Positions 22,133 to 42,702 of a DNA stretch of 64,000 nt are shown piece by piece. The stretch covers positions 992,001-1,056,000 of the forward strand of contig NC_043025.1 in the NCBI RefSeq assembly GCF_006345805.1. Reading direction: 5' to 3'. The notes under the pieces are model-generated. The model made no database searches, was not told the DNA's origin, and saw only the letters and a list, made by a program, of their open reading frames with translations. The position numbers were made by a program, and so were the translations under genes. Each line of letters begins with the position of its first letter. The first letter of the stretch is position 1. Source of the DNA: Octopus sinensis (taxonomy: Eukaryota).

Positions 22133-22210
22133 ATGCATAAAGGGGAAGTATACACCACATGGCTACTTCTCCTTTTCTCTCAGTTCAGCCTTTCTGCTAA
22201 ATACCGACAG
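22133..22210 (+). CDS. Putative first exon, signal peptide MHKGEVYTTWLLLLFSQFSLSA
   Basis: ATG, hydrophobic core, small residues at -3/-1, cag|gtcagt donor. Ends in phase 0 as assembled; needs one extra base (e.g. in 'gctaaatacc') to join the next phase-1 exon. Confidence 0.45.
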
Positions 22211-22247
22211 GTCAGTAAAAAACATATTTCTCGCCTTGAACTTAAAA

Positions 22248-22347
22248 NNNNNNNNNNNNNNNNNNNNNNNNNNNNNNNNNNNNNNNNNNNNNNNNNNNNN
22301 NNNNNNNNNNNNNNNNNNNNNNNNNNNNNNNNNNNNNNNNNNNNNNN
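22248..22347. other. Assembly gap (100 N)
   Basis: Run of n. Confidence 1.
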
Positions 22348-22409
22348 CCAGTAAGAAGAATTTTAGAGAATTGATACATCTTTATTGGGATAATTTGACC
22401 TATTTTAAG

Positions 22410-22498
22410 TTGGGCGATGTGTGACAGTGCGATGCGGTTTTGATACAGACCGTGATCCGATGGCCATATCTACTTGTGATCCGAGAGGTTTGGACACT
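22410..22498 (+). CDS. Three-finger/LU-like domain, exon 1 (GRCVTVRCGFDTDRDPMAISTCDPRGLDT)
   Basis: tttaag| acceptor, act|gtaagc donor, phase 1 to 0, open frame, three Cys. Confidence 0.65.
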
Positions 22499-22760
22499 GT
22501 AAGCATTTAAAACATGATTTTTGAATACTAAATAGCAATAAATTTTACAGAAGTTTGCTTATGCTGTTAATTTTCAACAATTCGGAAACTGTTTTACGGT
22601 TTCACTTATTGCTTTTGGGTATTTTAAAGCAATGATTAAACTTACTTGCATGGTAAACATCCCCAGTGGTGTTGTTTCTGTTGTTGTTGCTGTAATTAGC
22701 AGTAATCGTCCTAATAAATATTGTTGTTGTAGTGTATAATTTTCATATCTATTATTACAG

Positions 22761-22944
22761 CCTGTATGCCGATTCGCAATATCAATGAACGGTGCTAAAC
22801 TGAAGACTGAAAGGTCCTGCAGCACATACAGAAAATGTGTTGAAGCTATGAGAAACAATACCCTTACATGCAATAAACGGACGAATGGCACGTCTTGTAC
22901 TGGTTGTTGCGTCGGACACTTATGTAACAAGAATGATTTCATTG
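22761..22944 (+). CDS. Three-finger/LU-like domain, exon 2 (PVCRFAISMNGAKLKTERSCSTYRKCVEAMRNNTLTCNKRTNGTSCTGCCVGHLCNKNDFI)
   Basis: ttacag| acceptor, g|gtaagt donor, phase 0 to 1; ends in the CC-x4-CN Ly6/uPAR signature. Confidence 0.85.
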
Positions 22945-23159
22945 GTAAGTGTTATTTATTGTCTAATATAACACTAACAAGTTTATTACAAATTGATAGT
23001 TAATAAGAACATTTTATAGTAATTAATATACGGGAAAATATTTTGATGTGTGTATACTATTTGCAATGCTCTCTCTCCCTCTCTCCCTTTCCCCCTCTCT
23101 CTCCCTCTCTCCCTCTCCCCCTCTCTCTCTCTCTCTCTAACACACACACACTCACTCAC

Positions 23160-23452
23160 AGATGGAATCAAACACCACGACATGAAGGAAAAGAATAAAA
23201 GAGAGCACTTTTGGCGTGTGAGCAAATTATTGGTTACAAAGCTGAATGCCTGGAACATAATTTCGGCGATAAACTCGCACGCAGTCGCAGTAGTTCGGAA
23301 TGACGCTGGAAAACTGAAGTGGACAGAGGAGAAGCTAAAGGAGTTGGACAGGAAGTCAAGAAAGGTCCTATCGATGTATGGAACAAATCATCCATGTGCA
23401 GGCATTGATAGCCGATACACGAAGAGAGCGACAGGAAGAAAGGGAATGATAA

Positions 23453-23455
<3 letters not shown>
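23160..23455 (+). mobile_element. Decayed REL-retrotransposon RT C-terminal fragment (intronic)
   Basis: KLNAWNIISAINSHAVAVVR...WTEEKLKELDRKSRKVLSMYG..HP parallels family 1/2 proteins; longer duplicate at 31490-32300. Confidence 0.8.
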
Positions 23456-23511
<56 letters not shown>

Positions 23512-23917
23512 TTATTATTTGAGTGAATAAAATCCAAACTTACAAGGGAAAAATTAAATTTAGAAATACTAAATCAAATTTCACACAATATAAGATATAT
23601 AAAAAATTAAAATAAAAAAAAACAGCTTTTATCAATTCAAAATGAACAATTATATTACACCATCTAGAAAATTACATATAATAGAAATATAAAAAATAAC
23701 TAACAATTAAATGTCAATGCTTAAGTAAATTGCAAATAATAATAATAATAAAAACGTATATAATAGGAGGAATAAGAATAATATATATATATATAGTATT
23801 GTAAGTGTATATGTGATTATGAATGTATATTTTTATCTACGTATGTGGGTTTTATGTGCATCTATGACGTGTGTCTCATTTATAAACGCAGCGATTATTT
23901 TCTATATCAATCCATAG

Positions 23918-24000
23918 GATGGACCAAATCCCTCGTATTTCGTTTGATTTTTAAAAAGTTCAACGCATATAAAATCCCCGCTGAGAACATATCAAGAGCC
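23918..24000 (+). CDS. SEA-like domain exon 1 (GWTKSLVFRLIFKKFNAYKIPAENISRA)
   Basis: ccatag| and gcc|gtgagt, phase 1 to 0; in-frame paralog with the same splice sites at 34546-34628. Confidence 0.8.
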
Positions 24001-24626
24001 GTGAGTAGATATCTGCCCTCTCTCTCTCTCTCCTCCACACAGACGCGCGTGCGCGCACACATATGCACTGACATGCGCACACATGCATCACACACACATC
24101 CACACACTCTCACTCTCACGCACAAATACACACACACACACATGCATGTTTTATAGAAGAAATGTGAAACATCAAATAATAGTGAGGTTTCATGAAATTC
24201 AGACATTCAACTCCATTTACTGATAGTAAACTATTACATAAAAACTTTCTTTTTTAACTTACTGAATTTTTGCTGGTCAATAAAAAGACTGTTCTATCCA
24301 CTATTTTGTCTTTATATATTCCGTCATATAATTTCCGATTCTGACAAGTAAATAAAATCTACTCAATATTCACTAATCTTGTGTTTACACACACAGACAC
24401 ACACAGACACAGACACAGACACACACACACACACACACACACACACCACACACACACACACATACCCACACACACAAATAACCATATGTAATCCACACAC
24501 TTCCTTTTGGTAATATTTTTCTTCTCAACATTTTCGTTTTCCTTTCTGAAAAAGAGATATGCTCGAACATTAAAAACCCTCTCATTTCCCCCACTTTACC
24601 GAGTCTCAAGCTAATATATTTATATA

Positions 24627-24938
24627 TAATTATATTCTCAAACGCAGGGTAATGCTAATAGTATAGCATGAACAGGATAAAGTATTCACATGTTGCCGAA
24701 AACTCTGTCGGCGGCCAGATTACGCGTCTTATAAAGCTAGATGTATATAGCCTAACTTTGCAGAAGTATTTGTCGTTCGCGCAGTTTAGCTTAATGGTAA
24801 AGCACTTGAAGCGTAATCACAGGGGTGTGAGATGTAGTCACATAGCTGGCTGACGACAGATTTATCTGCAAATTATGGATATTTCATCCGGTTCACGTTA
24901 TATCATTAGCATTATCCTGCGTTTCAGAATAAAATTAT
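24627..24938. mobile_element. MITE with ~55-bp imperfect terminal inverted repeats
   Basis: 'attatattctcaaacgcagggtaatgctaat..catgaacaggata' versus the reverse complement of 'tcatccggttcacgttatatcattagcattatcctgcgtttcagaataaaatt'. Confidence 0.7.
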
Positions 24939-24999
24939 TTCTTTATTTTTCAATACATCTCAACGATTTTAAATCAAACTCAGTTTCTTTTATTTAATG

Positions 25000-25051
<52 letters not shown>

Positions 25052-25063
25052 CGGCTTTTGCAG

Positions 25064-25116
25064 ATTGAGCATGACCTTTCAACCGTGACGGGAACATTTA
25101 GAGTTGAAGACTGTGG
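25064..25116 (+). CDS. SEA-like domain exon 2 (IEHDLSTVTGTFRVEDCG)
   Basis: tttgcag| and gg|gtaagc, phase 0 to 2; paralog at 34961-35013. Confidence 0.8.
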
Positions 25117-25333
25117 GTAAGCAAATGCTTCTAACACATTTATTCAAATTTATTTGCTTTTGTTCCAAACATTCGATTTTATCGCATGTATTATACGTCA
25201 CAATAATCAACAGTGTTGTACTTGTGACCCAGAATATATTAATTCATACATTCAATGAAATGTTTAAGTGTTTTATCAATGTTTTATTATACAAAGGACA
25301 AACAACCCATATAAGATAATGATAGAACTGTAT

Positions 25334-25388
<55 letters not shown>

Positions 25389-26164
25389 TACTACGCATAT
25401 ATCGAAACAGGCCATTCTGAAGAAGGGAATTTCCCTTTATTAGTTTGTTCTTTTCCTTGTCTTGTTGTTTTGGAAAGGCTGTTTCCTTGTTGGAAAAGTC
25501 TGTTTCCTTGTGGATTTGTTTGTCTTCGTTTCTCGTTGTGTTCTACGCTTTTTTGTGGTGTCCCTGTACTCATATATGTATATATACGTATAGATGTAGG
25601 TATGTACATATATGTATGTATGTATGCATATGTTTTATTTATTAAATTGCTGTATATATATGTATATATATATACATACATATACATCACACATATATAT
25701 ATACACACATATATATACACACACATATATGGGTGTGTATATATATATAAATTGAGGTGGGTATCGGCAATTTGAAACCAACAAGGAAATAATTCACAGT
25801 CACTAAGTGTGAAAAGAGTGCAGTGAGAACCAGCATTATTAGAAATATTAGTCATAGACTCCTTAGCCACAAAAAGACATATGGTCTGTTTGCATTGACG
25901 GTGGGGAGAACATTCCCCACGGTAAGCCAGATGGATTAGATTAGCATGGCGATTTCTTATAGGAAGTTAATACTCATCAGCAATGCTCACTCCATTACGG
26001 CTGGTGGAGGCTAACTCACGCCTCTCAGTATCATTGAGAATGCCATAGGAATTAGGGACTGATTTCACAAAATGGCAATGTGAAGATTATAAAATATTGA
26101 AGGTAGCTAACACACATTTTAAAACCAACCAGGTAATTATATATATATATATATATATGTATGT

Positions 26165-26560
26165 ATCTCTCTCACTTTTTTCTCTCTTTTACTTGTTTCA
26201 GTCATTTGACTGCGGCCATGCTGGAGCACCACCTTTAACCGAGCAAATCGACTCCGGGACTTATTCTTTGTAAGCCCAGTACTTATTCTATTGGTCTCTT
26301 TTGCCGAACCGCTAAGTGACGGGGAGTAAACACACCAGCAATGCTTGGGAGACAAACACAGACACACAAACACACACACATATATATACATATATACGAC
26401 AGGCTTCTTTCAGTTTCCGTCTAACAAATCCGCTCACAAGGCATTGGTCGGCCCGGAGCTATAGCAGAAGACACTAGCCCAAGATGCCACGCAGTGGGAC
26501 TGAACCCGGAACCATGTGGTTGGTTAGCAAGCTACTTACCACACAGCCACTCCTGTATAT
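26165..26560. mobile_element. Two SINEs, opposite orientations
   Basis: 'tttcagtcatttgactgcggccatgctggagcacc...' (+) and the reverse of the 'gtggctgtgtggtaagtagcttgc...gggttcagtcccactgcg' head (-). Confidence 0.8.
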
Positions 26561-27100
26561 GTATAAATACATATATAAAGTGTATTCAAAGATTTATGCA
26601 GGGAGTGAAGGCCTTCATGTGGATTTCTTAGTGGACGAATATATTCTTAAGACCAACTTTTAGTCACCCGCTTGTAGTTCGAGCCTTCTTCACTAATTCT
26701 GTTCACAACCATACTGAATGCGGTTATTTTAGCTATGATGATTCAATCCTAAGCTATGTTTGAATATACTGATAGAAAGCTATGTGAAAGACAGTGGTGA
26801 TGGTGGTGGAGGTGAACGTGATGAAAAGTATTGATGGTGATGGCGTCAGAAGTCTGGATGGCGTGTGTATTGCAGATATGGTGGCGATGGTGGTGGTACT
26901 GTTGTTTATCATGAAGCTTTGCAATAAGTTCCGAGTCGACAAATTATATCATTGCTTTGATGAAAATTGTTCATTGCTTGAGAAATATTCATGTTTCATG
27001 AACTTATATGTACTCAATGCATGGTGTCATTGTTGGACCCCAAGGATTAACAGGGCAGCTTTTAAAACGAATGTATATATATATATATATATATATATAG

Positions 27101-27132
<32 letters not shown>

Positions 27133-27218
27133 CAATGTATGTATATTTCTAGCTAGCTAGCTAGCTACATACATACATACATACCGACATACATGTATGT
27201 ATTTATTTTTTATTTCAG

Positions 27219-27372
27219 CTCAAACAGAAATAAAATATTTGCTATTTACTGTACGGTATTTAGCGAAATGACTGAAAGTCAACTGCGGCACAATATCTCC
27301 GAAACTTTGAACAAATCCCAGGCATTTCTTAATTTAGGAGTTAAGAAAAGCCACATGAATTTCTTGATGAAA
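27219..27372 (+). CDS. SEA-like domain exon 3 (SNRNKIFAIYCTVFSEMTESQLRHNISETLNKSQAFLNLGVKKSHMN[LLDE])
   Basis: tttcag| and aaa|gtaagt. One base short near 27362 relative to both paralogs (aatttcttgatg vs aatttgcttgatg); restoring it gives phase 1. Confidence 0.8.
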
Positions 27373-28701
27373 GTAAGTATCGTTTTCTTATTAATTTTAT
27401 CATCATTACCGTCCGTCTATTAGCTTCATCAATCACCAACCTCTTCGTCGTTGTCGTCATCATCAACCACAGTAGATGATACAAAGCACACAGACTCTCT
27501 CCCCCTCTCTCTCTCTCACACACAGCTATTTATTTACATTTTCTCAACGCTTGGATAATTTAAAAAAAAGCATTTTATTTGCGCTTTTCCGTTTCTTGTC
27601 CCTACGGAACTGTTTTGTCTTTGCTCAGTTTCTTTTTAATTATACCAATTAACCGAGGGCAAAAATGTTTTCTTCTAATTTTGTATAGAAGTAGAAGATG
27701 CAGACTCTAATGGGCAGAAAATTGAAACAATTCCAGTACTTGCTTTAATTCAAACAGGAAAACTATTTAGTGCTGCAAATAATTTTCCTCAGCGAAAATT
27801 CATTTCGTACGAAGTGATCAGTTATTTTTACATTAGGATCGATAGATACACACACACAGCTCATACGATTTAAACATGTCTAAGAGATATAAGAGAGAAC
27901 AAATCATATCCCATTGCCGGAAAAGGATATATTTTCACTTCGTTTCCATTCATTTCATTTACCATCGCCAAATCAATATAACATCTACCCATTTCTAGCG
28001 TACATTAGGTTTTGCGCTTCCGGTCAGTATGTCTAAAGAGTGATCAATATATTGACGAAATTCAACACTAGAGGCCGCGAAACAGACTAGCATTCTGAGT
28101 AGTCATATCCCGTAACCAGTTATATATTGCTCGAGAAAATATAAAATATATATATATATATACATATGCACACACCTCTATTTCTATTTTATTTATTGTT
28201 TTTTAAGATATATAAGAAAAATATATATAGAATATATATATATATATAATCTACAGAATATCAAGTAGTTATGCAGTTTCAATCGGCTAAATTTAATTGA
28301 ACAATACAAAATTACATCAATTTAAATGCAATGCCATCTTTCAGCTGCATAAATAATGAATTAGAATTTTAATAAGTAGGACACTTTAATGTAATTTTTC
28401 TCAAATATTTGAACAGAGCAAGAAGATGGAGAAAATCATATTGTCGCCATTTTAGTTAAGAATAGACTACACTTCCAAGAATTGCATGGAGCCTCGTTGG
28501 GGTGGGGGTCCTTGTGTTGTAAGGGATTGTAATTCATTTCTAAATCATTTATCTCTTTATAAACTACTAAATGAAAAACTAGAAATCTGTCTATTTTGAA
28601 TAAATATATATGCTCTCCGTATATGTTTGCAACACTTCGTGTATCATTGTCCTCAAATCAGCCAGCAGGTGGTCCAAACAATTTATTTCCAACATTAACT
28701 G

Positions 28702-28743
<42 letters not shown>

Positions 28744-28768
28744 TACTACTACTACTACTACTACTACT
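28702..28768 (+). repeat. (CTA)n microsatellite
   Basis: Read directly; lies just upstream of an acceptor. Confidence 0.95.
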
Positions 28769-28804: not shown

Positions 28805-28919
28805 TGGTTTGTGATGAAAGCACAACATCAACTAACAATCGAGCTTTCTCTTGGCCAATGACAAAAATAGGAACTACTGCGGAGATCCCGTGTCATGGAA
28901 ATGTAGCCACCAGGCATTG
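28805..28919 (+). CDS. HRM (hormone receptor) domain exon 1 (VCDESTTSTNNRAFSWPMTKIGTTAEIPCHGNVATRHC)
   Basis: ttttcag| and tg|gttcgt, phase 1 to 2; C...WP.T..G....+PC....ATR.C is the HRM pattern of adhesion/secretin GPCRs. Confidence 0.85.
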
Positions 28920-29129
28920 GTTCGTTTGTATTGATTTATTTCTACTGAAAGTTTGAAGTTTTCAGCGCCATCCTATTGTGAGAGAATGTTACTTGGTAGA
29001 GCAAATAACAGGTTTATAGATTAACAAGATAGAATTAAACGTCTATCGGTTGCAATCTCTTGTCCGGGCATTTTTACATTTTATACATTATTTGATATAA
29101 TTTAGCCTTGTCCTAACTATCTAGGTTTG

Positions 29130-30321: not shown

Positions 30322-30463
30322 TTCTTCCAGAACGATGGGGCATCCAGAAATGGCATCAAGTCAAACCTGTCATCACAAAAGTGTTCACCGTTTACTGGTA
30401 TCTGGCAAGAACCAGACATGTCTCAATGTTACAATGCAGAACAGAGCAAAGGCATTGATGATG
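30322..30463 (+). CDS. HRM domain exon 2 (SSRTMGHPEMASSQ[N]LSSQKCSPFTGIWQEPDMSQCYNAEQSKGIDD)
   Basis: tttttcag| and g|gtgagc. G.W..PD.S.C is the HRM C-terminal motif; one base must be added in 'caaacctg' (~30363) to link it to the phase-2 entry frame. Confidence 0.75.
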
Positions 30464-31124: not shown

Positions 31125-31330
31125 AGGCGGTAAGCTGGCAGAATCGTTAGCAGAGCGGGAGAAATGCTTTGCAGTACTTCGTCTGTCTTTACGTTCTGAG
31201 TTCAAATTCCGCCAAGATTGACTTTGCTTTTCATAATTTCTGTGTCGATAAAATAAGCGCAAGTTGAGCTCTGGGTCAATGTAATCAACTTAACCCCCTA
31301 CACCAAATCTGCTGGTCACGTACCAATGTC
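31125..31330 (+). mobile_element. tRNA-type SINE
   Basis: 'ggcggtaagctggcagaatcgttagca...ttctgagttcaaattccgcc'. Confidence 0.85.
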
Positions 31331-31489
31331 TGAAACCTATATTATTCCGTTTATTATGCTCTTTTATTTACACGATTTTTTCATTTCATGTTCATTTCAT
31401 TCATCGTTTACAATGCCCCCCCCCCCCACACACACACTCCCTCTCTCTCTCACTCACACTCACACTCACACACAGATGGAATCAAACAC

Positions 31490-32300
31490 CACGACATGAA
31501 GGAAAAGAGAAAAAGAGAGCACTTTTGGCGAGTGATCAAAATATTGGTTTGAAAGCTGGAAAACTGAAGTGGACAGAGAAGCTAAAGGAGATGGACAGGA
31601 AGTCAAGAAAGGTCCTAACGATGTATGGAGCCCATCATCCACGTGCAGACCTCGATCGCCGATACACGAAGAGAGCGAATGGAGAAAGGGACTGATAAGT
31701 GTGGGAAACTGCGTGCGTTTCGAACTCGAAGGCTTAATGAGATACCGAACCCAAAGAAAGGAAACCTTGTTAGTGACAGTTAGGAATGAGGGAGTATTGA
31801 AAGCAGGAGAACCGAAGGAAGAAACACAAAAAGAAATGAAGAAGAATGGCGCAAGAAGGGAGAACACAATGAATTTCCATATAACAAAAAGTAGGTGGGA
31901 TTGGCTGATGAAAGGAATTCTAAAGAAAGAGACCGAGAACACTATATTGGCAGCGCAAGAGTAAGCTTTGGCCACAAACTGGAGGGTCGACATTAGAATG
32001 AGCAAGTGTCCAGGAACTCCCACAAGGAACTCCTACAAAACCTCTGATAAAGAGAAATAATAATCAAAAAGGAATTTGACAAAAACTAATAAGTTGCTGA
32101 AAATATGTGGAGCTCAACATCCGAAAGCAGATATCAACCGACTGTAATTAAGGAACGACCAGACTGGGAGATGCTAAATAGCAGTAGAAGAACGTATAGA
32201 GATGGAAAAAAAAACTTAGCCGAGTATTTACAATGTGGCACAGAAAAACTACTAAAGACTGAATAAAAAGGCAGGTAAAAGCAGACTTCTCTTGCTATAA
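31490..32300 (+). mobile_element. Decayed REL-retrotransposon 3' half
   Basis: WDWLMKGILKKETENTILAAQE*ALATN; its 5' part is the duplicate of 23160-23455. Confidence 0.8.
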
Positions 32301-32519
32301 TTCTAATGAAAAGGCCTGAAAGTGTGAAAAGTGCAGAAACTGTGTCCAAAAAGCCTAAATTAAGCGACGCGACAGAGAAAAGGCTGGATGGTTTTGTGTT
32401 GCTGGAAAGGAACAATCATATTCTAATACATATGTATGCAAGTGTGGGCATGGTTGCATGTATATATGTATATATGTATACATATATACACATAAAGATA
32501 GATATATATATATATGCGT

Positions 32520-32930
32520 AGTAGTGGGTGTGTGGTAAGTAGATTGCTTACGAACCATATGGTCCCGGGTTCAGTCCCACTGCATGGTACCTTGGCAAGT
32601 GTCTTCTGCTATAACCTCAGGCCGACCAAAGCCTTGTTAGTGGATTTGGTAGACGGAAACTGAAAGAAGCCTGTCGTATATATGTATATGTATATATATC
32701 TATGTGTGTGTATGTGTGTATATGTTTGTGTCTGTTTTTATCCCCCGCCTCCAACATCGCTTGACAACCGATGCTGGTGTGTTTACGACCCTGTAACTTA
32801 GCGGTTCGGCAAAAGAGACCGATAGAATAAATACTAGGCTTACAATGAATAAGTACTGGGGTCGATTTGCTCGACTAAACGCGGTGCTCCAGCATAGCAA
32901 CAGTCAAATGACTGAAACAAATAAAAGAGT
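32520..32930. mobile_element. Two SINEs, opposite orientations
   Basis: + strand head 'gtgtgtggtaag...gggttcagtcccactg' and - strand 'gcggttcggcaaaagagaccgatagaataa' body. Confidence 0.8.
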
Positions 32931-33378
32931 AAAAAGAGTAAAGAGTATATATGAATCTTTAGTCAAATATATTCAATGAGAATATTACATACTGAATATA
33001 TATTGAGTGCTCTATTGTATCAAAGTGTTAATATTATTAAGGTATTTATATATTTAATGCGAGCGATTATATATATATTTAATAATATATTATTATTAAT
33101 ATTAAGAATTCAATATCAGAAAACTTCACAGAAAGATATACACGTGTGAAAAAAAATGGTTGTATTAAAAATATATAAATAAATAAATATAAATATTTAT
33201 AAAAATATATGTATATATGTATACATATAAATATATAATGTATATGACAGTTTATAAGTTTTGAATTAAATATTTAAACCTTTTTACGATCGCTTCACAG
33301 AAGTGCTGTCCCTATAATGAAATCCTATATTGGATACGTGTACGTGCACATAGATGCAAATAAATGTTTCTACACGTA

Positions 33379-33456
<78 letters not shown>

Positions 33457-33752
33457 TACTTATGTATGTACATATGAATATAAACTTATATATATATATA
33501 TATGTTACGTATGTATGCAAATGTGGGCTGATTTGCATATATATATATATAAATAGATGAGTGTATTTTTACCTTGTTAACGATTAACACGGAAAAAATA
33601 AATAAATAGTTACCGGGGTAGCAAAAATCTCGCAAGTAAAGAGGTTGTAACTCCTTGTTTATAAAGGTAGAAACTTCGTGTTTACGTTGAATATTTTGAA
33701 TAATATATGAATAAGTAAATGGAGTTTAACGCAGGTGTAATCAAATATTTTT

Positions 33753-34308: not shown

Positions 34309-34545
34309 TACATGGAACTTTGTATGTGTACAAACGTGCATTTATATATGTGTTTATACGTGTAGATGCAGATGTATTAATGTGAGTCTGTATATTCGTA
34401 TATATATATATATATATTTATAGTATGTTTAAGTGTATATGTGATTGTGAATGTATATTTTTATCTACGTATGTGGGTTTTATGTGCATCTATGACGTGT
34501 GTCTCATTTATAAATACAGCAATTATTTTCTATATCAATCCATAG

Positions 34546-34628
34546 GCTGGACCAAATCCTTCGCATTTCGTTTGATTTTAAAATCTTTCAACGAATATAA
34601 AAAACCTGCTGAGAACATATCAAGAGCC
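34546..34628 (+). CDS. Duplicated SEA exon 1' (GWTKSFAFRLILKSFNEYKKPAENISRA)
   Basis: Same 83-nt length, phases and splice sites as 23918-24000. Confidence 0.75.
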
Positions 34629-34690
34629 GTGAGTAGATATCTGCCCTCTCTTTCTCCGAACACACACACACACGCGCACACATGCATACA

Positions 34691-34724
<34 letters not shown>

Positions 34725-34960
34725 CATATTTTATACAAGAAATGCAAAACGTCAATTTAAATAGTGAGTGAGCTCAATACGTTTCGTAGATAGTGATATC
34801 GATTTTGTTAGCCTGATCAGCTTAAACACATAAATACATACATATGTAAAATTATTTCCTTATCTGTATCTTTTTATACTTCTCAAAGCTTTTAAATCAA
34901 ACTTTGTTTCTTGAATTTAATGTATGCATATATATATATATACACATCTGGCTTTTGCAG

Positions 34961-35013
34961 ATGGAGCATGAGTTTTTAACCGTGACTGGAAAATTCCGAG
35001 TTGAATATCCTGG
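34961..35013 (+). CDS. Duplicated SEA exon 2' (MEHEFLTVTGKFRVEYPG)
   Basis: Same 53-nt length, phases and splice sites as 25064-25116. Confidence 0.75.
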
Positions 35014-35292
35014 GTAAGCAAAAGCTTCTAACACATTTATTCAAATTTATTTTGTTTTGTTCCAAACATTCGATTTTATCGCACGTATTAGACGTCACCA
35101 TAATCAACAGTGTTTTACTTGTGACCCACAATATACTAATTCGTACCTTCGACGAAATGCTTAAGTGTTTTATCAATGTTTTATTATACAAAGGACAAAC
35201 AAACCCATATAAAGATAAAGAGAGAACTGTGTATATATATATATGCATATATACATACACATACATACCTATATATATATATATATATATAA

Positions 35293-38200
35293 TCTAATAA
35301 TAATTTAACATTACTTGAAAAGGTAGTGGGTAGCGAACTTCTTCACTACTTCTGGGAGTGACGACCCTGCCTGACACGAGTTCCGGGCTCAGCTGGCTCC
35401 GGCTGACAGTACCCGGTATGGGCCCCTATCCAGGGTTACGGAACGGAAACAACCTTCAAAGAAATCCGGAGTGGAGCCCCGAATGCGGTCTAGTGTTCGA
35501 CTCGACACTCTTCCGGCAGCTCCTGCAACCAAGCTGGTGCCAAACGTAATGCACTGCACTCCTTTGGACTACATCAGCAAGGTCGAGAGAGGAAACCTGA
35601 CGATTGGGCTACCCTGGACTTTCTTATCTATAGCCCAGGCTTGCGCAAAACTGGAGAGCACACTTCAGTGCTGCTGTAAAAAGCTGCAGAAACAACATGG
35701 GAGGTAACAGTCACGAGTGATAAGTCTATTCAGATTGGCGTAAAATATGGGCGCTACGGGTTACCTCTGACGGTGGGAGGGACCTCCGTGTCCTATTGGT
35801 TAGCTACTGCCCACCTCAAGCTGGGCAGCCCCTAGTTAATAAGGTGCTGACCCGCCACAGGTCGCCTGCTTCATTGGGTGCTTGAAGCTAAAAGTATGAC
35901 TTGAAAAGCGGCCTGCAACCTCTGCACCAGGCAAACAACTAAAAGTCAAGAAAACACCAGTTGTGCGGTTGGCAAGTTGGAATGTCAGGACCATGTGCCC
36001 TGGAATATCTGATGATCTACTCAGGGTTGAAGACACAAGGAAAACGGCCATCATTGACCGTGAACTAAAGAGGATCAACATAGATATTGCTGGGCTGCAG
36101 GAGACAAGTCTCCCCTCAAACGGCAAACTCAAAGAGCAGGATTTCACCTCCTTTTGGCAGGAAGCGATCCAGAAGAACCTCGTCAGCATGGCGTTGGCTT
36201 TGCAGTGAGAAACTCATTACTCTCCTCAATAGAACCACCATCAGGAGGCACTGAGCGTATCCCCTCACTGCGCCTCTCGACTTCTTCTGGCTCAGTACAT
36301 CTACTCAGCATCTCTGCTCCCACTTTCTACAGCTCAGAGGAGACCAAGTACCAGTTCTACAAAGATCTCAACTGTGTCATAGAAAATATACCAACGACTG
36401 AAAATATCTACCTTCTGGGGGATTTTAACGCTCGCGTGGGATCTGACCATGATTCGTGGCCCATTTGTGTTGGACACTTTGGTATTGGCAACATGAATGA
36501 CAATGGCCAGAGACTACTCGTATTCTCTACATACCACAACCTGTGCATCACAAACACATTCTTTACCAACAAGCCTTCCCACAAGGCATCTTGGAGACAT
36601 CCAAGATCTCACCACTGGCATCAGCTGGATCTCATCATTACACGGAGATCCTTTCTGAATTCTACTCTATTGACCCGCAGTTACCACAGCGCGGATTGTG
36701 ACACAGACCACTCACTAATTAGAAGCAGGGTGAGGATTCTCCCTAAAAAAGTCCATCGCTTCAAGAAAGTGGGCCGACCACGCATTAACACTGCCAGAAC
36801 CTCGGAACCTACACTGCGAAAATGTTTTGCTGCTTCTATCAAAGTTGCCCTCAGTAGCTGCCCAACCTCCTCTGCTGAAAGTAGGTGGAACTATATCAGG
36901 GAAGCTTTGTATACGACATCAATAGATACTTTCGGCATGAGAGAAAGGCAAAACCCAGATTGGTTCAATGCTGGGCTCTCAGAGCTGGAGCCAGTTATCG
37001 AAGCAAAGCGTGCAGCTCTGATGCAATACAAGAGTGATTCTTCTACAAAGTCACTCGAAGAACTCAGAAAGGCACGAAATAAAACCCAACTGACAGCCAG
37101 ACGCTGTGCAAATGGGTATTGGCAGGAAATCTGTCAGAGTATCCAGTCAGCTGCTGACAGTGGCGACACCTGTGGGATGTATGTCGGTTTGAAGAAGGCC
37201 CTCGGTCCATCCGCAACCAAGTCAGCCCCTCTGGAGATCTCATCACGGATCAAGGCAAGCAAATGGATAGATGGGTGGAGCACTACCAGGATCTCTACTC
37301 ACTGGAGACTACAGTGGCTGAGGCTGCAGTCGAGAGTGTCAAGATCTTGCCAGTCATGTGCGAACCTGACAGTCCGCCATCTATAGCAGAGCTCACCAAG
37401 GCTCTTGACTCCCTAGCAAGAACTAAGTCTCCGGGAAAAGACGGCACCCCCTCAGATATCATCAAAGCCGGTAAAAACCCCATCCTGCTTCGGCATCTTC
37501 ATGAGCTTCTGTGTCAGTGCTGGGAAGAGGGTACAGTCCCTCAGGATATGCGGGATGCTAACACCATTACGCTTTACAAAAACAAAGGTGACCGTGGTGA
37601 TTGTAACAATTACCGTGGTATATCTCTTCTAAGCACTGTTAGAAAGACCTTTGCCCGCGTTATCCTGGTAAGGCTACGACTACTTGCTCCTCGTATCTAT
37701 CCGGAATCGCGTGTGGCTTTAGAAGAAGCAGATCAACTATCGATATGATATTCTCCGTACGCCAACTTCAGGAGAAGTCCAGAGAGCAGAAAATGCCATT
37801 ATATATGGCCTTCATTGATATAAAAAAGGCTTTTGACTCGGTAAGCAGAACAGGCCTCTTCATCCTGCTCCAAAAAATCGGATGTCCACCAAAGCTGCTG
37901 AGGATCATCAAGTCTTTCCATGATGACATGCAAGGCACCTTACAGCACAACGGTTCAACATCAGCCGCCTTCCAAATAAAAAACGGGGTAAAGCAAGGTT
38001 GTGTCCTCGCTCCTACATTGTTTGGCATCTTCTTCTCGCTCTTACTCTCACAAGCCTTTCAGACATCAGATGATGGAGTGTTTCTGCGCAGTAGAAGTGA
38101 CGGGAAACTGTTCAATCTCTCGCGCCTGTGTGCCAAGACCAAAATCAGAAACGTCCTGATCAAGGAGATGTTATTTGCTGATGATGCCGCTCTGGTATCA

Positions 38201-39182
38201 CACACAGAAGAAGCCCTCCAAAGGTTCATTGACTGTTTTGAGCAAGCATGTAACGACTTTGGCTTAGCTATCAGCCTTAAGAAGACCAACATCATGGGTC
38301 AGGCTACATCGGACATCCCAAACATACATATTGGAGACCACAGATTACAAGAGGTGGAGAAGTTTACCTATCTGGGCTCTATCGTCACCTACAACCTATC
38401 CCTTGACGCTGAGCTCAATATACGCATTGGAAAGGCAGCTGCTGCGATGGCCCAACTCTCCAAACGGGCTTGGGACAACAATAAGCTGATGAAGACCACG
38501 AAAATGAAGATCTACCAGGCATGTGTACTCAGCACTCTACTGTATGGAAGTGAGACTTGCACGCTATACACACACCAAGAGCCTCACCTAAACATCTTTC
38601 ACCTGCGCTGCCTCCGAAAAATCCTCCTCATCAAATGGCAGAATCATATCCCCAACAAAGATGTCCTCAGGCAAGCAGGAATACCAAGCATGTTTGCACT
38701 CCTCACACAAAGACGTATGAGATGGCTTGGGCATGTTAGCCGTATGAAAGATGGCAGAATCCCCAAGGACATACTCTACGGAGAGCTTGCTAGCGGTACC
38801 AGGTCTGTGGGTAGACCGATCTTACGTTACAAGGATGTTTGCAAAAGGGACATGAAGGCCTGCAACATCAATATTAGCGGTTGGGAGGCAGTTGCCGGCA
38901 ACCGTGGAGAATGGCGACGTACCGTAAAAGAGGGAATACAAAGGAGTGACAGAGAGAGAGAGGAGAAATGGAAAGAAAAGAAGAGACGTAAACAAGAAAC
39001 TATGACATTACAACCAGCCAGGAACAGTCTTCGCTACATTTGCGGTACCTGCCAGAGGGAGTGTTTGTCCAGGATAGGACTACACAGCCACAGCAGGAAT
39101 GTATCAGGATATGAAATATAAAAGCCGGACTGGACTATTTTATGCGCAACTCCATTGTCTCCCGAGACAAAAAGGATGCCAA

Positions 39183-39184
<2 letters not shown>
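35293..39184 (+). mobile_element. Near-full-length RTE (BovB-like) LINE: APE endonuclease + RT
   Basis: RLASWNVRT, GLQET, LLGDFNARVG, HQLDLII, DTDH (APE); YRGISLLS, AFIDIKKAFDSV, GVKQGCVLAPTLF, LFADDAAL, FTYLGS (RT); C-terminal CGTC..C...GLHSH. Split over four ORFs; ~650-bp 5' UTR; (TA)n on both flanks. Confidence 0.95.
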
Positions 39185-39219
<35 letters not shown>

Positions 39220-39426
39220 CAACACACAGAAGGATAAGATCAATATTTAAATATCGATTTTATCAGGTGGCCAGCATGGGAATAAAAAACATCAAGGTAA
39301 CAATATTTACAATTATAATATAGGGTAATAGCAGTCAAATCTTGACTGTAAAACCACATTAAATGTTCATATAGCACCAGGAGAGAAGACGAAGAGACAA
39401 AATAGAATAGCAAACATTTCTGGATA

Positions 39427-39485
39427 ATTCCAGATCCCGGATTTCTGACTCTGCATAAGAAATGCTCTGCCTTCATCAGTGGAAT
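39427..39485 (-). ncRNA. Second type-I hammerhead ribozyme candidate
   Basis: Minus strand ATTCCA-CTGATGA-A-GGC..GCAT(TTCTT)ATGC..GTC-A-GAAA-TCCGGGA-TC-TGGAAT: 6-bp stem I, intact core, AUC site; A.A at the base of stem II. Confidence 0.55.
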
Positions 39486-39588
39486 ATACTCAGAAAAGCA
39501 AATAAATACAAATATATACATATACAACATACGATATACTTACATATACGAACGTATTTATAATATATATATATATATATATTATATA

Positions 39589-40039
39589 GAGGGCATTATT
39601 ACACATAAATGCCTCACACTAAGAGGGACATAAGTCATTTCTACCAAAAATTTCACTAATCATACCCAATGCAGTTTTTCAAAGCAAGACATTTAAAAAT
39701 GAATTTAGTCCTATATCACCTGTGATTTCGCACTCACCGCATCAAAATTTGCGTCCATGCTCATCGGTAGAACTGATTCTGAACACATCATAAATAAACT
39801 ACCAGCACTGTCGAAGTCGAACAGCCAACTGATCTTTCTAACGAAGCACATGGAGAAGTTTATAAATCATATATCCGGTAAATGGCGGGCTTTTTCGAAC
39901 TGCATTCGGAGGGAAAAGTTTTTTCGGAATAAATTTAACAATTAAGATAAGATAACTTATGGGTATGATTAGTGAAATTTTTGGTAGAAATGACTTATGT
40001 CCCTCTTAGTGTGAGGCATTTATGTGTAATAATGCCCTC
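39589..40039. mobile_element. Tc1/mariner-type MITE, 451 bp, perfect 80-bp TIRs, TA flanks
   Basis: 39589-39668 is the exact reverse complement of 39960-40039; TA on each side. Confidence 0.92.
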
Positions 40040-40161
40040 TATATAATATAAAATAATATGTTCAAAGGAAAAATTATTTTCGAATTTTCTCTGATGAGGT
40101 TTTTCACGCTATCTACCTGATAATTTCTTGTTAAGATTCCTTATAAGAAGTTATCCTTAAT

Positions 40162-40256
<95 letters not shown>

Positions 40257-40397
40257 GTATATATATATATATGAGCGTGTATATATAAATCAAGGCGGCT
40301 ATCAGCATTTTAAGACCAACAGGGAAATAATTCACAGTCACTAAAGGTGACAAGAGTGCAGTGAGCACCAGCATTATTAGAAATATTAGTCATAGAC

Positions 40398-40605
40398 TAT
40401 TTCGTTTTGGGATTTGGTTTGCAAGATTCTTTATATGAGTTCGTGTGTTGAAGCATATTCTGTTGTCTCTGGGGAGAGCCATTTTCTTTTTGTGCCTTAT
40501 AATTCCACACACTCACCGGTAACATTTCAACGTATTTCTTATTTTTATTTTCCTAAAACTTTTCGTTGAGTCTTGCAAACTTTTACCAGTGATTGTGTTA
40601 AATTA
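40398..40605. mobile_element. 208-bp insertion with 11-bp target-site duplication
   Basis: 'tagtcatagac' at 40387-40397 and 40606-40616; single copy at the paralogous empty site 25849-25859. Confidence 0.8.
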
Positions 40606-41157
40606 TAGTCATAGACACCTTAGCCATAAAAAAAACACATAGTGCATTGGCAGGGGGGGGGGGGAACATTCCCCACGGTAAGCCAGATGGATTAGATTAG
40701 CATGGTAATTTCTTATAAGAAGTTAATACTCATCAGCAATGCTCACTCCATTACGGCTGGTGGAGGTTAACTCCCGCCTGTCAATATCATTGAGAATGAC
40801 ATAAAAATGAGTGATTGATTTCACAAAATGGCAATGTGAAGATTATAAAATATTGAAGGTAGCTAACACACATTTTAAAACCAACCAGGTAATTATATAT
40901 ATATAAAATGTATATAAAAACTTATACACGGAGAGAAGACCACCATGTGGATTTCTTACATGCTAAAGAGGGCAAGCCACGGTACTGGACGAATATGTTC
41001 TTAACACTAACTTTTAGTCACCCGCTTGTAGTTTCAGCCTTCTTCACTAATTCTGTTCGTAACCATACTGAATGCGGTTATTTTACCTATGATGATCCAA
41101 TCCTAAACTATATTTGAATATAAAAATAATTGAAACAAAACAATTAATCTCTTTAAG

Positions 41158-41240
41158 TGTTCAAAGTCAACAGCGGCGCAATATCTCCCAAGTTTTGAAC
41201 AAATTCCAGGCATTGCTCAACATGAATTTGCTTGATGAAA
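41158..41240 (+). CDS. Shortened SEA exon 3' (VQSQQRRNISQVLNKFQALLNMNLLDE)
   Basis: ttaag| and |gtaagt, phase 2 to 1, in frame with exon 34961-35013. Confidence 0.55.
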
Positions 41241-42120
41241 GTAAGTATCGTGTTTCTTCATTTTTCTAACACCATTACCGTCATAATTAGCTTCATCAAT
41301 CACCATACCATCCTCTTCGTCGTTGTCGTCATCATCAACCACAACGGATGATATCTTAGGACACCCACGCGTGCACGCAAGCGCACAGACTCCCTCCCTC
41401 TCTCTCATACATACAACTATTCATTTACATTTTCTCGAAGCTTGGATAATTTCAATAAATCAGCATTTTATTTTGCGCTTTTCCGTTTCTTGTCCCTACG
41501 GAACTGTTTGTCTAACCGAGGGCAAAAATGTTTTCTTCTAATTTTGTATAGAAGTAGAAGATGCAGACTCTACTGGGCAGAATAATTCACACAATTCCAG
41601 TACTTTCTTTAATTCACTCAGGAAAATTATTCAATGCTGCAAATAATTTTCCTCAGCGAAAATTCATTTTGTTCGACGTGATCATATTAATTTTTGAATT
41701 AGGATCGATAGATACACACACAGCTCATACGCTTTAACTCATCTCTAAGAGATATAAAAGAGGAATAAATCACATCCCATTGCCGAACAATGATACAATT
41801 TCTTTCACTCCGTTTCCATTCATTTCCTTTTACCACTGCCAAATCAATATAAAGTCTATCTATTTCCAGCATAAAAGAGGTTTATGCGCATCCGGTCAGT
41901 ATGTCTAAGTAGTGGTCAATATTGAGGAAATGCAACAATAGAGGCCGCGAAACAGACAATAGCATTTTTACTAGTCAAATCCCGTAACAAATTATATATT
42001 GCTCGAGAAAATGTAAAAATATATATACATATACACATACATATTTCGGGATGGTCATGTTATTTATTATTTAAAAAAATATATAAATGAATAAATATAT
42101 GTGTGCATATATATATTGTG

Positions 42121-42340
42121 TGCCCAGGTAGAGTATACGGGGATCTCTACGTACAACAGTGTTCGGGCAAACAGATCACATTGGCATAATTTGAAGAAAG
42201 CTGTCAAAGTAGTTTCTCATGGATTCAGATCTACGTTTCGAGCATTGTCTTCTGTGAAATATACACGCTGGCCATTTTCAAGATGTACAGATAGATTTTA
42301 AGAAAGTGTTCCTACATGTAAACAGGATGTGACCTTTGTG
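42121..42340 (-). mobile_element. Helitron fragment (duplicate of 1419-1640)
   Basis: Near-identical sequence. Confidence 0.9.
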
Positions 42341-42649
42341 TTGACAGTGTGTTTGTCTCAAAGCAGAACAGTTCTTCCATCAGCGCTTGCCAATTGGCTG
42401 AAGTAACATGAAAGGCATCGTCATTCATGGTATATTCGTGAATAAGTCACAAACTGAAATACGTTGATCTATTGTTTAGGGAAATATTATTTACTTGTTT
42501 AAGGGTTGTACTGGATACATAGCGAAAACAGCTCTAACAGTTGAAATAGTAAGAAATAAACATATATATATATATATACAAATTAATATTATCCGGTAAT
42601 TAATGTGCTTAAACTTTTATATTTTATGTTTTTTTCATTATGTTTCCAG

Positions 42650-42702
42650 GTTCAAGTACTGGTAATGGAACAGAGGATAGAACAGCAGAAACAAACTTTT
42701 GA
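42650..42702 (+). CDS. Putative short terminal exon ((S)SSTGNGTEDRTAETNF*)
   Basis: tttccag| acceptor, in frame with 41158-41240, TGA stop. Confidence 0.45.

What the first reader, a model, noticed from the sequence alone, without database searches (positions are those of the whole stretch)
22133..42702. Adhesion-GPCR-type ectodomain gene with no GAIN or 7TM: signal-LU-SEA-HRM-SEA'-stop
Seen: twelve exons chain by splice phase into signal peptide, three-finger domain, SEA-like domain, HRM, a second SEA module and a 16-residue tail plus stop. Established: in adhesion GPCRs HRM is followed by GAIN/GPS and 7TM. I find neither in the 21 kb downstream, which is TE and microsatellite. Inference: a secreted ectodomain-only derivative (decoy or ligand) of a lineage-expanded receptor family. 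The same SEA'-tail ending at 455-2000 implies at least two such paralogs in tandem.
Basis: partly seen in the sequence, partly recalled or inferred. Interest (0 to 1): 0.8.

Follow-up and report, generated by a model that had tools for sequence, protein, structure and literature searches.

The report
Receptor-less octopus adhesion-GPCR gene, 5' end missing
This is the back two-thirds of an octopus gene descended from a large adhesion-receptor family that has lost its membrane-spanning receptor part. The same design is already predicted in sister genes, but this copy's start lies in an assembly gap and two single-base deletions break its reading frame.

Summary
The core observation holds, but the 12-exon model does not.

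**Confirmed**
- Ten of the twelve exons match Octopus proteins that share one design: signal, LRRs, LRRCT, three-finger (LU), a beta-alpha-beta-beta-alpha-beta module, HRM, a shortened copy of that module, and the tail ...SSSTGNGTEDRTAETNF.
- The O. vulgaris ortholog (CAJ1099261.1) and at least eight paralogs end the same way.
- Probing with 42 family proteins found no LRR, GAIN or 7TM exon anywhere in the window.
- The last exon and about 1.1 kb after it are homologous to the 3' end of a full-length receptor paralog. The gene therefore truly ends there.

**Not confirmed**
- The "signal" exon (22133) and the first "LU" exon (22410) match nothing in the family.
- Homology to the ortholog starts at the first base after the gap. 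The real signal, LRR and LU-N exons are missing there.
- Two 1-nt deletions (about 27363 and 30362) break the frame. Normal splicing stops at 28859.
- The deletions fit an excess of roughly 3 single-base indels per kb in this sequence, so they may be assembly errors.
- "SEA" is supported only at the level of fold class, and the second copy lacks a strand.

A secreted decoy or ligand role is inference. dN/dS is about 0.76.

The parts
22133..22214 (+). Not supported: it lies left of the assembly gap, on sequence with no counterpart in the orthologous gene.
   Evidence: No similarity to any of 42 family proteins. The left flank of the gap has no match in L002 apart from dispersed repeats. Real family signal peptides read MFHHVVSYRRSLVLILCTILFLETQA....
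22248..22347 (.). Assembly gap that hides the true 5' part of the gene: the signal/LRRNT exon, the single-LRR exons, the LRRCT exon and the LU N-terminal exon.
   Evidence: Homology to L002, and to two places in L001, starts at 22348. In L002 the LU-N exon lies 1.55 kb upstream of that point and the first coding exon about 26 kb upstream. The upstream 7.6 kb of L002 is absent from the window.
22410..22498 (+). Not supported: this is intronic sequence.
   Evidence: Not used by any gene model. Its first Cys is W in the ortholog and R in a paralog, and its nucleotide identity equals that of the surrounding intron.
22761..22944 (+). LU (three-finger) domain, C-terminal exon (PVCRF...CCVGHLCNKNDFI). 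It starts in phase 0 and ends in phase 1.
   Evidence: tblastn gives 98% identity to P0004, P0018 and P0011, and the exon is 100% nucleotide-identical to the ortholog. In the PDB the LU profile finds only LYPD1, ACVR1 and LYPD6, weakly (E 0.08-7).
23918..24000 (+). Exon a1 of the SEA-like module (strand beta1 and start of helix alpha1).
   Evidence: tblastn; AlphaFold model of the homologous module.
25064..25116 (+). Exon a2 of the SEA-like module (strand beta2, ends ...EDCG).
   Evidence: tblastn gives 100% identity to P0018. The Cys-Gly pair is invariant across the family.
27219..27372 (+). Exon a3 of the SEA-like module (beta3, alpha2, beta4). It is 154 nt here and 155 nt in the ortholog: a 1-nt deletion at about 27363 shifts the frame 9 nt before the donor.
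   Evidence: Nucleotide alignment to L002. The homologs' exon starts at SNRNKIFAIYC....
28805..28919 (+). HRM exon 1 (VCDESTT...ATRH, followed by a split Cys codon). As assembled, normal splicing reads it out of frame and stops at 28859-28861.
   Evidence: tblastn gives 97% identity to P0004; translation with the ortholog's exon boundaries.
30322..30463 (+). HRM exon 2 (C-SSRTMGHPEMASSQNLSSQKCSPFTGIWQEPDMSQC...). It is 142 nt here and 143 nt in the ortholog: a 1-nt deletion in an A4 run at 30362.
   Evidence: Every homolog aligns as two HSPs in different frames that meet at 30364; nucleotide alignment.
34546..34628 (+). Exon b1 of SEA', a duplicate of a1.
   Evidence: Identical to the ortholog. 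Block B is 78-80% identical to block A, introns included.
34961..35013 (+). Exon b2 of SEA', a duplicate of a2. CG has become PG.
   Evidence: tblastn gives 100% identity.
35300..40196 (+). LINE retrotransposon inserted in the b2-b3 intron (ORFs 36064-37383 and 37643-39118).
   Evidence: RVT_1 at E 6.6e-27. It interrupts the A/B block homology and is shared with the ortholog.
41158..41240 (+). Exon b3 of SEA', a truncated duplicate of a3. It starts 16 codons later, so strand beta3 is missing, and it carries a 21-nt deletion.
   Evidence: tblastn; sequence comparison.
42650..42702 (+). The family's 3'-terminal coding exon (SSSTGNGTEDRTAETNF, stop).
   Evidence: 100% identity to eight short-form proteins. 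Homologous to the last exon of the full-length receptors P0028 and P0069 (...AETNF).
42703..43773 (+). 3' flank or UTR homologous to the 3' flank of the full-length receptor gene. AATAAA motifs at 42843 and 42871.
   Evidence: blastn to L003 43068-44248 at 73-80% identity; motif scan.
455..540 (+). b3 exon of the upstream duplicate copy (+3 nt, frame kept).
1948..2000 (+). Terminal exon of the upstream duplicate copy, with coding sequence identical to 42650-42702.

Best explanation
**What it is.** The region holds the last ten coding exons of a 7TM-less ('short-form') member of an Octopus-specific, tandemly amplified family of LRR-containing adhesion GPCRs. The window is most likely from O. 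sinensis or a close relative of O. vulgaris. The gene is the ortholog of O. vulgaris CAJ1099261.1.

**Ancestral design.** Full-length family members run: signal, LRRNT, LRRs, LRRCT, LU three-finger, a family-specific beta-alpha-beta-beta-alpha-beta module, HRM, GAIN/GPS, 7TM, and a short tail ending ...AETNF.

**What changed in the short-form subfamily.** The GAIN and 7TM exons are gone. HRM exon 2 splices instead into a duplicated, partly decayed copy of the three-exon module, and then into the family's normal terminal exon. This works because every cassette is phase 1-1 and a multiple of three: 291, 258 and 219 nt.

**Predicted product (inferred).** A secreted, soluble LRR-LU-module-HRM protein. 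It would have a signal peptide, no hydrophobic segment, and a hydrophilic tail. It could bind the same partners as its membrane-bound paralogs, acting as a decoy or as a ligand in trans.

**State of this window's copy.** The gene is incomplete. Its 5' exons fall in the assembly gap. Two single-base deletions, in a3 and H2, break the frame. I judge these more likely to be assembly indel errors than real pseudogenisation.

**Shown versus inferred.**
- Shown: exon homology, absence of GAIN/7TM, homology of the terminal exon, gap discontinuity, frameshifts, and intact ORFs in three other loci.
- Inferred: secretion, function, and the cause of the frameshifts.
For: - **Family and architecture.** 42 Octopus homologs were found. 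At least eight protein clusters end SEA'-SSSTGNGTEDRTAETNF. Full-length relatives carry GPS and 7tm_2.
- **Ortholog.** L002 is collinear with window 22348-52382 at 95-98% identity.
- **Intact ORFs elsewhere.** The 10-exon CDS is open in L002 and L001 with the same stop, and those two differ only by in-frame indels of 27 and 21 nt. L004 carries the same ten exons in the same order.
- **No receptor exons.** No GAIN, 7TM or LRR exon in the window, nor any GAIN or 7TM exon in L002 or L004.
- **True 3' end.** The terminal exon and about 1.1 kb of 3' flank are homologous to the receptor gene L003.
- **Gap.** Homology starts at 22348, and the upstream orthologous 7.6 kb is missing.
- **Frameshifts.**
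- **Indel excess.** The window shows 6.4 single-base indels per kb at 1.7% divergence from L002. Two loci within the O. vulgaris assembly show 6.1 per kb at 3.5% divergence. L001 versus the window gives 13.5 per kb, against 9.9 per kb for L001 versus L002. This implies roughly 3 extra indels per kb in the window, enough to explain 2 in 1,003 exonic bases.
- **No membrane anchor.** Short forms have no hydrophobic 19-mer.
- **Module fold.** The module is predicted confidently as beta-alpha-beta-beta-alpha-beta (pLDDT 80-92).
- **Published context.** The octopus-specific adhesion-GPCR expansion with LRRs is described in PMC6408891.
Against: - dN/dS between the ortholog and a paralog is about 0.76 (41 non-synonymous versus 14 synonymous changes). 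Constraint is weak, so a function for the short forms is not demonstrated.
- SEA' is not predicted to fold (pLDDT below 50) and lacks a strand.
- No transcript data could be examined. All support for splicing comes from public gene models, which are themselves predictions.
- The frameshifts could be real.
- The source species and assembly of the window were not identified. No listed protein is flagged as encoded by the window itself.
Confidence: 0.72

Rival explanations
1. The window copy is a genuine, recently inactivated pseudogene. The two 1-nt deletions are real, normal splicing stops at 28859, and only the paralogs and the O. vulgaris ortholog are intact.
For: There are two independent frameshifts in about 1 kb of CDS. 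The family evolves under weak constraint, with dN/dS of 0.76. Closely related O. sinensis models (P0017, P0018) stop early after exon a2. P0062 reads the HRM exons in shifted frames, which suggests decay in other copies too.
Against: The window carries roughly 3 excess single-base indels per kb relative to a high-quality assembly, which predicts about 3 spurious indels in 1,003 exonic bases. One deletion lies in an A4 homopolymer. Exon substitution divergence (0.8%) is half that of introns (1.58%), and there are no in-frame stop codons apart from those the shifts create.
Confidence: 0.3
2. The short-form genes are transcribed but functionless debris of a birth-and-death tandem family. They have no decoy or ligand role.
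For: dN/dS is about 0.76 in every segment. SEA' is truncated and not predicted to fold. Public models splice the terminal exon in all three phases, which looks like splicing noise.
Against: In the two loci where the CDS was reconstructed (L002, L001) the 10-exon ORF is fully open with the same stop and they differ only by in-frame indels, although introns between them carry many indels; a third locus (L004) keeps the same exons and order. At least eight protein clusters in two species keep the full architecture.
Confidence: 0.35
3. The exons are internal exons of a normal receptor gene whose GAIN and 7TM exons lie beyond the window.
For: The window ends 21 kb after the tail exon, and introns in the family reach 10 kb or more.
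Against: The tail exon carries the family's conserved stop and is homologous, together with 1.1 kb of 3' flank, to the last exon of the receptor gene. The ortholog and paralog models end there. No GAIN or 7TM exon lies in L002, which includes 10 kb downstream, or in L004.
Confidence: 0.03
4. The gene has its own short signal peptide at 22133 and no LRRs.
For: The chain is open and uses GT-AG sites.
Against: Exons 1 and 2 have no homolog. The gap separates non-contiguous sequence. The chain needs weak sites (GTATCG, GTTTGT) placed exactly where the ortholog shows 1-nt deletions. Without a first exon matching LQCQTC, the LU domain is incomplete.
Confidence: 0.03

Closest known systems
O. vulgaris CAJ1099261.1 ('slit homolog 1 protein-like isoform X13', P0004), with short-form paralogs XP_036370814.1 (O. 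sinensis), CAI9744517.1 and CAI9732351.1
   Same: Same exon order and the same tail. Window exons are 97-100% identical to P0004, and the locus is collinear at 95-98%.
   Different: Those models have intact frames and a full 5' end (signal plus LRRs). The window copy lacks that 5' end and has two frameshifts. All of them are unstudied predictions with misleading names.
Octopus-specific adhesion GPCR expansion ('group 3', Ritschard et al. 2019, PMC6408891)
   Same: Same family. The HRM and module exons are 45-85% identical to members that carry GPS and 7tm_2. Members have LRRs, and one has a Death domain, as in P0058. The genes lie together on the same chromosomes.
   Different: That study collected genes by their 7TM Pfam signature, so 7TM-less derivatives were excluded by design. 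This gene has neither GAIN/GPS nor 7TM.
Vertebrate ADGRA2/ADGRA3 (GPR124/125)
   Same: The order LRR, LRRCT, HRM, GAIN, 7TM. Family GAIN regions hit Pfam PF26588 (ADGRA2/3 GAIN). A distant member is named ADGRA3 (XP_014773211.1). From my own knowledge, a lead only: ADGRA2/3 end in a PDZ-binding ETTV motif, and this family ends in ETNF. A soluble ADGRA2 fragment is reported to be bioactive (reference list of PMC13197933).
   Different: The octopus family has an LU domain and a novel alpha/beta module where ADGRA has an Ig domain. The short form lacks the receptor half entirely.
ADGRG6 (GPR126), the name NCBI gives to many of these proteins
   Same: From my own knowledge: an SEA domain followed by HormR precedes GAIN. 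That resembles the order module-HRM-GAIN seen here.
   Different: No CUB or PTX domain. No detectable sequence relation between the module and any SEA domain. LRRs are present.
7TM-independent ('trans', N-terminus-only) signalling by shed adhesion-GPCR ectodomains
   Same: A soluble adhesion-GPCR ectodomain acting away from its 7TM is an accepted concept (PMC13197933).
   Different: In that case the fragment arises by proteolysis or splicing of a receptor gene. Here it would be fixed in separate genes that lack GAIN, so no autoproteolysis or Stachel is involved.

Membership tests
Adhesion GPCR (class B2) | 7TM domain of the secretin/adhesion type (Pfam 7tm_2) | tested here: not met
   No 7TM exon in the window by tblastn with P0028, P0029 and others. 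None in the ortholog or paralog loci. Short-form proteins have no hydrophobic 19-mer.
Adhesion GPCR (class B2) | GAIN domain with GPS motif immediately before the 7TM | tested here: not met
   No GAIN or GPS exon in the window. Relatives P0041, P0033 and P0058 do have GPS.
Octopus LRR-adhesion-GPCR expansion (descent, not receptor function) | Sequence homology of ectodomain exons and terminal exon to members that carry GPS and 7tm_2 | tested here: met
   E-values of 1e-16 to 1e-28 to P0028, P0029, P0032 and P0033. Terminal exon and 3' flank are homologous to L003.
HRM / HormR domain (PF02793) | Pfam gathering score of 26.2 bits | tested here: not met
   Scores are 14-21 bits (E 6e-4 to 0.05). 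The match falls at the same place and covers nearly the whole profile in the window model and seven homologs.
HRM / HormR domain (PF02793) | Conserved Cys/Trp framework (C...WP...C...R.C...G.W...C) and a position directly before GAIN in full-length members | tested here: met
   C3, W17, P18, C30, R37, C39, C60, G65, W67 and C75 are invariant. Position is shown. A PDB profile search found nothing.
SEA domain | Sequence-profile match to SEA (Pfam or solved SEA structures) | tested here: not met
   No SEA hit in Pfam for the window model or 16 homologs. The module profile finds no SEA chain in the PDB.
SEA domain | Alpha/beta sandwich fold (beta-alpha-beta-beta-alpha-beta) with a specific structural match to SEA | tested here: inconclusive
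   AlphaFold gives a confident beta-alpha-beta-beta-alpha-beta fold. Foldseek returns only generic ferredoxin-like folds at E of 1.7e-3 or weaker, with no SEA in the top 50.
SEA domain | G/S-V-V-V autoproteolysis motif at the beta2-beta3 turn | tested here: not met
   The turn has an invariant C-G followed by a variable residue (S, L, N or Y).
Ly6/uPAR (LU) three-finger domain | Cysteine framework with N-terminal LxCxxC and C-terminal CCxxxLCN | tested here: met
   In the family, LQCQTC...GCCVGHLCN is invariant. The only five PDB profile hits are LYPD1, ACVR1 and LYPD6, with weak E-values of 0.08-7. In the window only the C-terminal exon is present. There is no Pfam hit, and the AlphaFold model of this part is low confidence.

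The most novel reading that the evidence does not exclude
Octopuses of the vulgaris/sinensis lineage have turned part of their expanded LRR-adhesion-GPCR family into a set of separately encoded, secreted 'ectodomain-only' proteins: LRR, LU, module, HRM. These arose by phase-1-1 cassette duplication and loss of GAIN and 7TM, and were then amplified by gene duplication. They would act in trans as decoys or ligands for the partners of the membrane-bound paralogs in suckers, skin and the axial nerve cord.
Probability: 0.25. Interest if true: 0.6.

Novelty: new variant of a known kind. Interest (0 to 1): 0.38.

Why it matters
Adhesion GPCRs are defined by GAIN plus 7TM. Their ectodomains are known to act on their own only after shedding or alternative splicing. 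A subfamily of separate genes that encode only the ectodomain would be a natural experiment in 7TM-independent adhesion-GPCR function. This holds especially because the genes sit inside an octopus-specific expansion expressed in suckers, skin and the axial nerve cord (PMC6408891).

The subfamily would also have escaped surveys that collect GPCRs by their 7TM signature.

There are practical lessons too:
- A 100-N gap here hides an unknown but probably large stretch: in the ortholog the first coding exon lies about 26 kb upstream of the matching point.
- A phase-consistent exon chain can be built across genuine frameshifts by choosing weak splice sites.
- The public names of these proteins ('slit homolog', 'ADGRG6-like isoform X2') are misleading.

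Tried and rejected
1. **Relic of the receptor's last intron.** I suspected that the H2-b1 intron (32498-33558) held a relic of the receptor's last intron, which would point to a fusion of two tandem genes. With low-complexity filtering off, the match dissolved into a (TA)n microsatellite plus a dispersed repeat. Rejected.
2. **PDB profile search with the whole-family alignment.** It was swamped by LRR proteins. I repeated it per domain. The SEA-like module and HRM gave nothing. LU gave weak but consistent three-finger hits.
3. **Foldseek on the LU plus module model.** Only generic ferredoxin-like folds came back.
4. **Exact look-ups of P0018, P0017, P0011, P0003 and P0008.** None is on record. 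I therefore could not find the window's own locus or its nearest O. sinensis paralog.
5. **Search of 1.84 billion representative proteins with the module profile.** I hoped distant relatives would carry a recognised SEA domain. There were only 29 hits, of which one filamin-repeat protein and one internally repetitive low-complexity sequence are evidently spurious, the rest that were examined belong to this Octopus family, and none has a Pfam SEA match.
6. **Literature searches.** I found no description of the 7TM-less subfamily.

Full report
**Organism and setting.** The window is AT-rich, rich in repeats and microsatellites, and split into exons and introns. An O. vulgaris locus (L002, CATOCA020000001.1:3,728,851-3,817,595, reverse strand) is collinear with window 22348-52382 at 95-98% identity. 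It is therefore the ortholog. The window itself probably comes from O. sinensis or a close relative.

**Reproducing the observation.** Two joins in that chain need weak splice sites:
- a donor at 27376 (taa|GTATCG), used instead of the perfect aaa|GTAAGT at 27372;
- a donor at 28923 (GTTTGT) paired with an acceptor at 30331.

**What the homologs show.** Public gene models define a family with this order: signal peptide, LRRNT, a variable number of LRRs, LRRCT, an LU/three-finger domain, a module of about 97 residues, HRM, and then one of two endings.
- Ending (a): GAIN/GPS, 7TM and a short tail ending ...AETNF. Examples are P0028, P0069, P0058, P0067 and P0072, which carry GPS and 7tm_2.
- Ending (b): a 73-94-residue partial copy of the module and the tail SSSTGNGTEDRTAETNF. 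Examples are P0001, P0002, P0004-P0007, P0009, P0010 and P0053.

tblastn of all 42 proteins against the window supports ten exons:
- LU-C 22761-22944
- a1 23918-24000, a2 25064-25116, a3 27219-27372
- H1 28805-28919, H2 30322-30463
- b1 34546-34628, b2 34961-35013, b3 41158-41240
- tail 42650-42702

All ten have AG/GT boundaries. No LRR, GAIN, GPS or 7TM exon is present on either strand anywhere in the 64 kb. The sequence after the tail exon is LINE fragments and microsatellites.

**The gap.** Homology to the ortholog, and to two places in a paralog locus, starts at 22348, the first base after the N run. The left flank has no counterpart in the 88-kb orthologous locus apart from dispersed repeats. 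In the ortholog, the LU N-terminal exon lies 1.55 kb upstream of the matching point. The LRRCT, LRR and signal exons lie 6.5 to 26 kb upstream. None of that 7.6 kb occurs in the window. The two sides of the gap are therefore not continuous, and the true 5' end of the gene is missing.

The cysteine that exon 2 needs for a three-finger fold is W in the ortholog and R in a paralog. I treat both exons as spurious.

**Frameshifts.** Relative to the ortholog, the window lacks one base in a3 (about 27363, 9 nt before the donor) and one base in an A4 run in H2 (30362). Every homolog aligns to H2 as two pieces in different frames. With the ortholog's exon boundaries, the assembled sequence stops at 28859-28861.

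The cause of the shifts is open. Three comparisons bear on it:

| Comparison | Substitution divergence | Single-base indels per kb |
|---|---|---|
| Window vs O. vulgaris ortholog (L002) | 1.7% | 6.4 |
| L004 vs L002 (both within the O. vulgaris assembly) | 3.5% | 6.1 |
| L001 vs window | 6.3% | 13.5 |
| L001 vs L002 | 6.0% | 9.9 |

Both contrasts point to about 3 extra single-base indels per kb in the window. That predicts about 3 in the 1,003 exonic bases, and 2 are seen. Exons also show half the substitution divergence of introns (0.8% against 1.58%). I consider assembly error more likely than real pseudogenisation, roughly 2 to 1. Only reads can settle it.

**Is the short form a real gene type?** For L002 (O. 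vulgaris) and L001 (O. sinensis) I rebuilt the 10-exon CDS from fixed homologous exon boundaries. It is fully open in both and ends at the same stop; these two differ only by in-frame indels of 27 and 21 nt, although their introns differ by many indels. A third locus, L004 (O. vulgaris), carries the same exons in the same order.

The terminal exon and about 1.1 kb beyond it are homologous (73-80%) to the terminal exon and 3' flank of a full-length receptor gene on the same O. vulgaris contig (L003). So the short forms end at the family's genuine 3' end. The stop lies in the last exon, and AATAAA motifs follow at 42843 and 42871. Short-form proteins have no hydrophobic 19-mer, whereas the receptors have the expected cluster of them.

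**How the architecture arose.** Block A (23781-28241, exons a1-a3 with their introns) and block B (34408-35290 plus 40196-42116, exons b1-b3) are 78-80% identical. Block B is interrupted by a LINE at 35300-40196 that the ortholog shares. A-to-A and B-to-B identities between paralogs are higher (85-93%). The A/B duplication therefore predates the spread of the short-form genes.

Every cassette starts and ends in phase 1 and is a multiple of three:
- module: 83+53+155 = 291 nt
- HRM: 115+143 = 258 nt
- SEA': 83+53+83 = 219 nt

Cassettes can thus be gained, lost or skipped without breaking the frame. Public models show all of these variants, for example LU-HRM-GAIN, LU-module-GAIN and LU-GAIN. 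Class 1-1 modules are the classic substrate of exon shuffling in extracellular proteins; this last point is established knowledge, not tested here.

**Domain labels.**
- *HRM.* Pfam scores are below threshold (14-21 bits against 26.2). They recur at the same place over nearly the whole profile in eight proteins. The Cys/Trp framework is invariant.
- *LU.* There is no Pfam hit. The LxCxxC...CCxxxLCN framework is invariant. The only PDB profile hits are LYPD1, ACVR1 and LYPD6, all weak.
- *'SEA'.* There is no sequence link to any SEA domain. AlphaFold predicts a confident beta-alpha-beta-beta-alpha-beta sandwich (pLDDT 80-92). Foldseek returns only generic ferredoxin-like folds, and the GSVVV motif is absent. 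The module profile finds just 29 proteins among 1.84 billion representatives; two of these are evidently spurious (a filamin-repeat protein and a repetitive low-complexity sequence), and the others that were examined belong to this family, with every source-named one from Octopus. I call it a family-specific SEA-like module.
- *SEA'.* It lacks strand beta3, because b3 starts 16 codons later than a3. It has lost both cysteines and is not predicted to fold (pLDDT below 50).

**Function.** dN/dS between the ortholog and paralog P0001 is 0.76 overall and 0.7-1.4 per segment, from 41 non-synonymous and 14 synonymous changes. That means weak constraint, diversifying selection, or both. ORF integrity across paralogs argues for coding function. 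A role as decoy or ligand is plausible by analogy with 7TM-independent signalling by shed ectodomains (PMC13197933), but it is untested.

**The upstream copy.** Window 1-17440 is a roughly 96% copy of 40700-55442. It carries b3 (455-540, +3 nt, frame kept) and an identical tail exon (1948-2000). The second copy (40700 onwards) is closer to the O. vulgaris locus (97-98%) than the two copies are to each other (about 96%). This favours a true older paralog over a haplotype artefact. The rest of that upstream gene lies outside the window.

**Literature.** An octopus-specific adhesion-GPCR expansion with LRRs is published (PMC6408891). It was collected by the 7TM signature, which excludes these genes. 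I found no description of the 7TM-less subfamily. Its members do exist as predicted proteins under uninformative names.

**Verdict.**
- The architecture without GAIN or 7TM is real and recurrent.
- The specific 12-exon ORF with its own signal peptide is not.
- The locus as assembled is truncated by the gap and frameshifted.

Noticed in passing
window 1-17440 and 40700-55442: A large segmental duplication at about 96% identity, spaced 40.7 kb apart. It spans the 3' end of the gene and its downstream region. The duplication stops at 17440/55442.
   Followed up: partly
window 35300-40196 (+): A near full-length LINE sits in the b2-b3 intron, with two long ORFs (440 and 492 aa, RVT_1 at E 6.6e-27). 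It is shared with the O. vulgaris ortholog, so it predates the species split.
   Followed up: partly
window 56048-57259 (-) and 59329-62368 (-): Further LINE fragments: reverse transcriptase, an endonuclease domain, and a C-terminal C2H2-like zinc finger.
   Followed up: partly
window 8700-10600 and 12000-14100, repeated at about 49-53 kb: Very AT-rich microsatellite blocks (GC down to 17%). They translate as long runs of I, N, Y and L in all frames.
   Followed up: no
window 42650-42702, and gene models P0003, P0011, P0034, P0036: Public gene models read the family's terminal exon in all three phases: ...SSSTGNGTEDRTAETNF*, ...GFKYW* (b2 spliced straight to the tail) and ...VLAQVMEQQKRTHK*. 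It acts as a shared 3' end whatever exon comes before it.
   Followed up: partly
L001 9563-10271, 17144-17836, 24488-24861: The O. sinensis paralog LOC115226131 has its LU exon region triplicated. Models P0001 and P0013 carry two or three LU domains in tandem.
   Followed up: no
window 22348-52382 versus L002: The window carries roughly 3 more single-base indels per kb than expected from comparisons within the O. vulgaris assembly. This suggests locally poor polishing near the gap and the duplication.
   Followed up: yes
window 23047-23505 and 31294-31700 (+): Two copies of a repeat-derived ORF (...KREHFWRVSK...NHPCAGIDSRYTKRA...) lie in introns. A public O. sinensis model (P0061, XP_036358930.1) fuses this ORF to the SEA'-tail exons of another paralog.
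   Followed up: no
C-terminus ...AETNF (window 42686-42699): The shared tail ends in T-N-F. This resembles a class I PDZ-binding motif, like the ETTV of vertebrate ADGRA2/3 (recalled from memory, not tested). In a secreted short form it would be vestigial.
   Followed up: no
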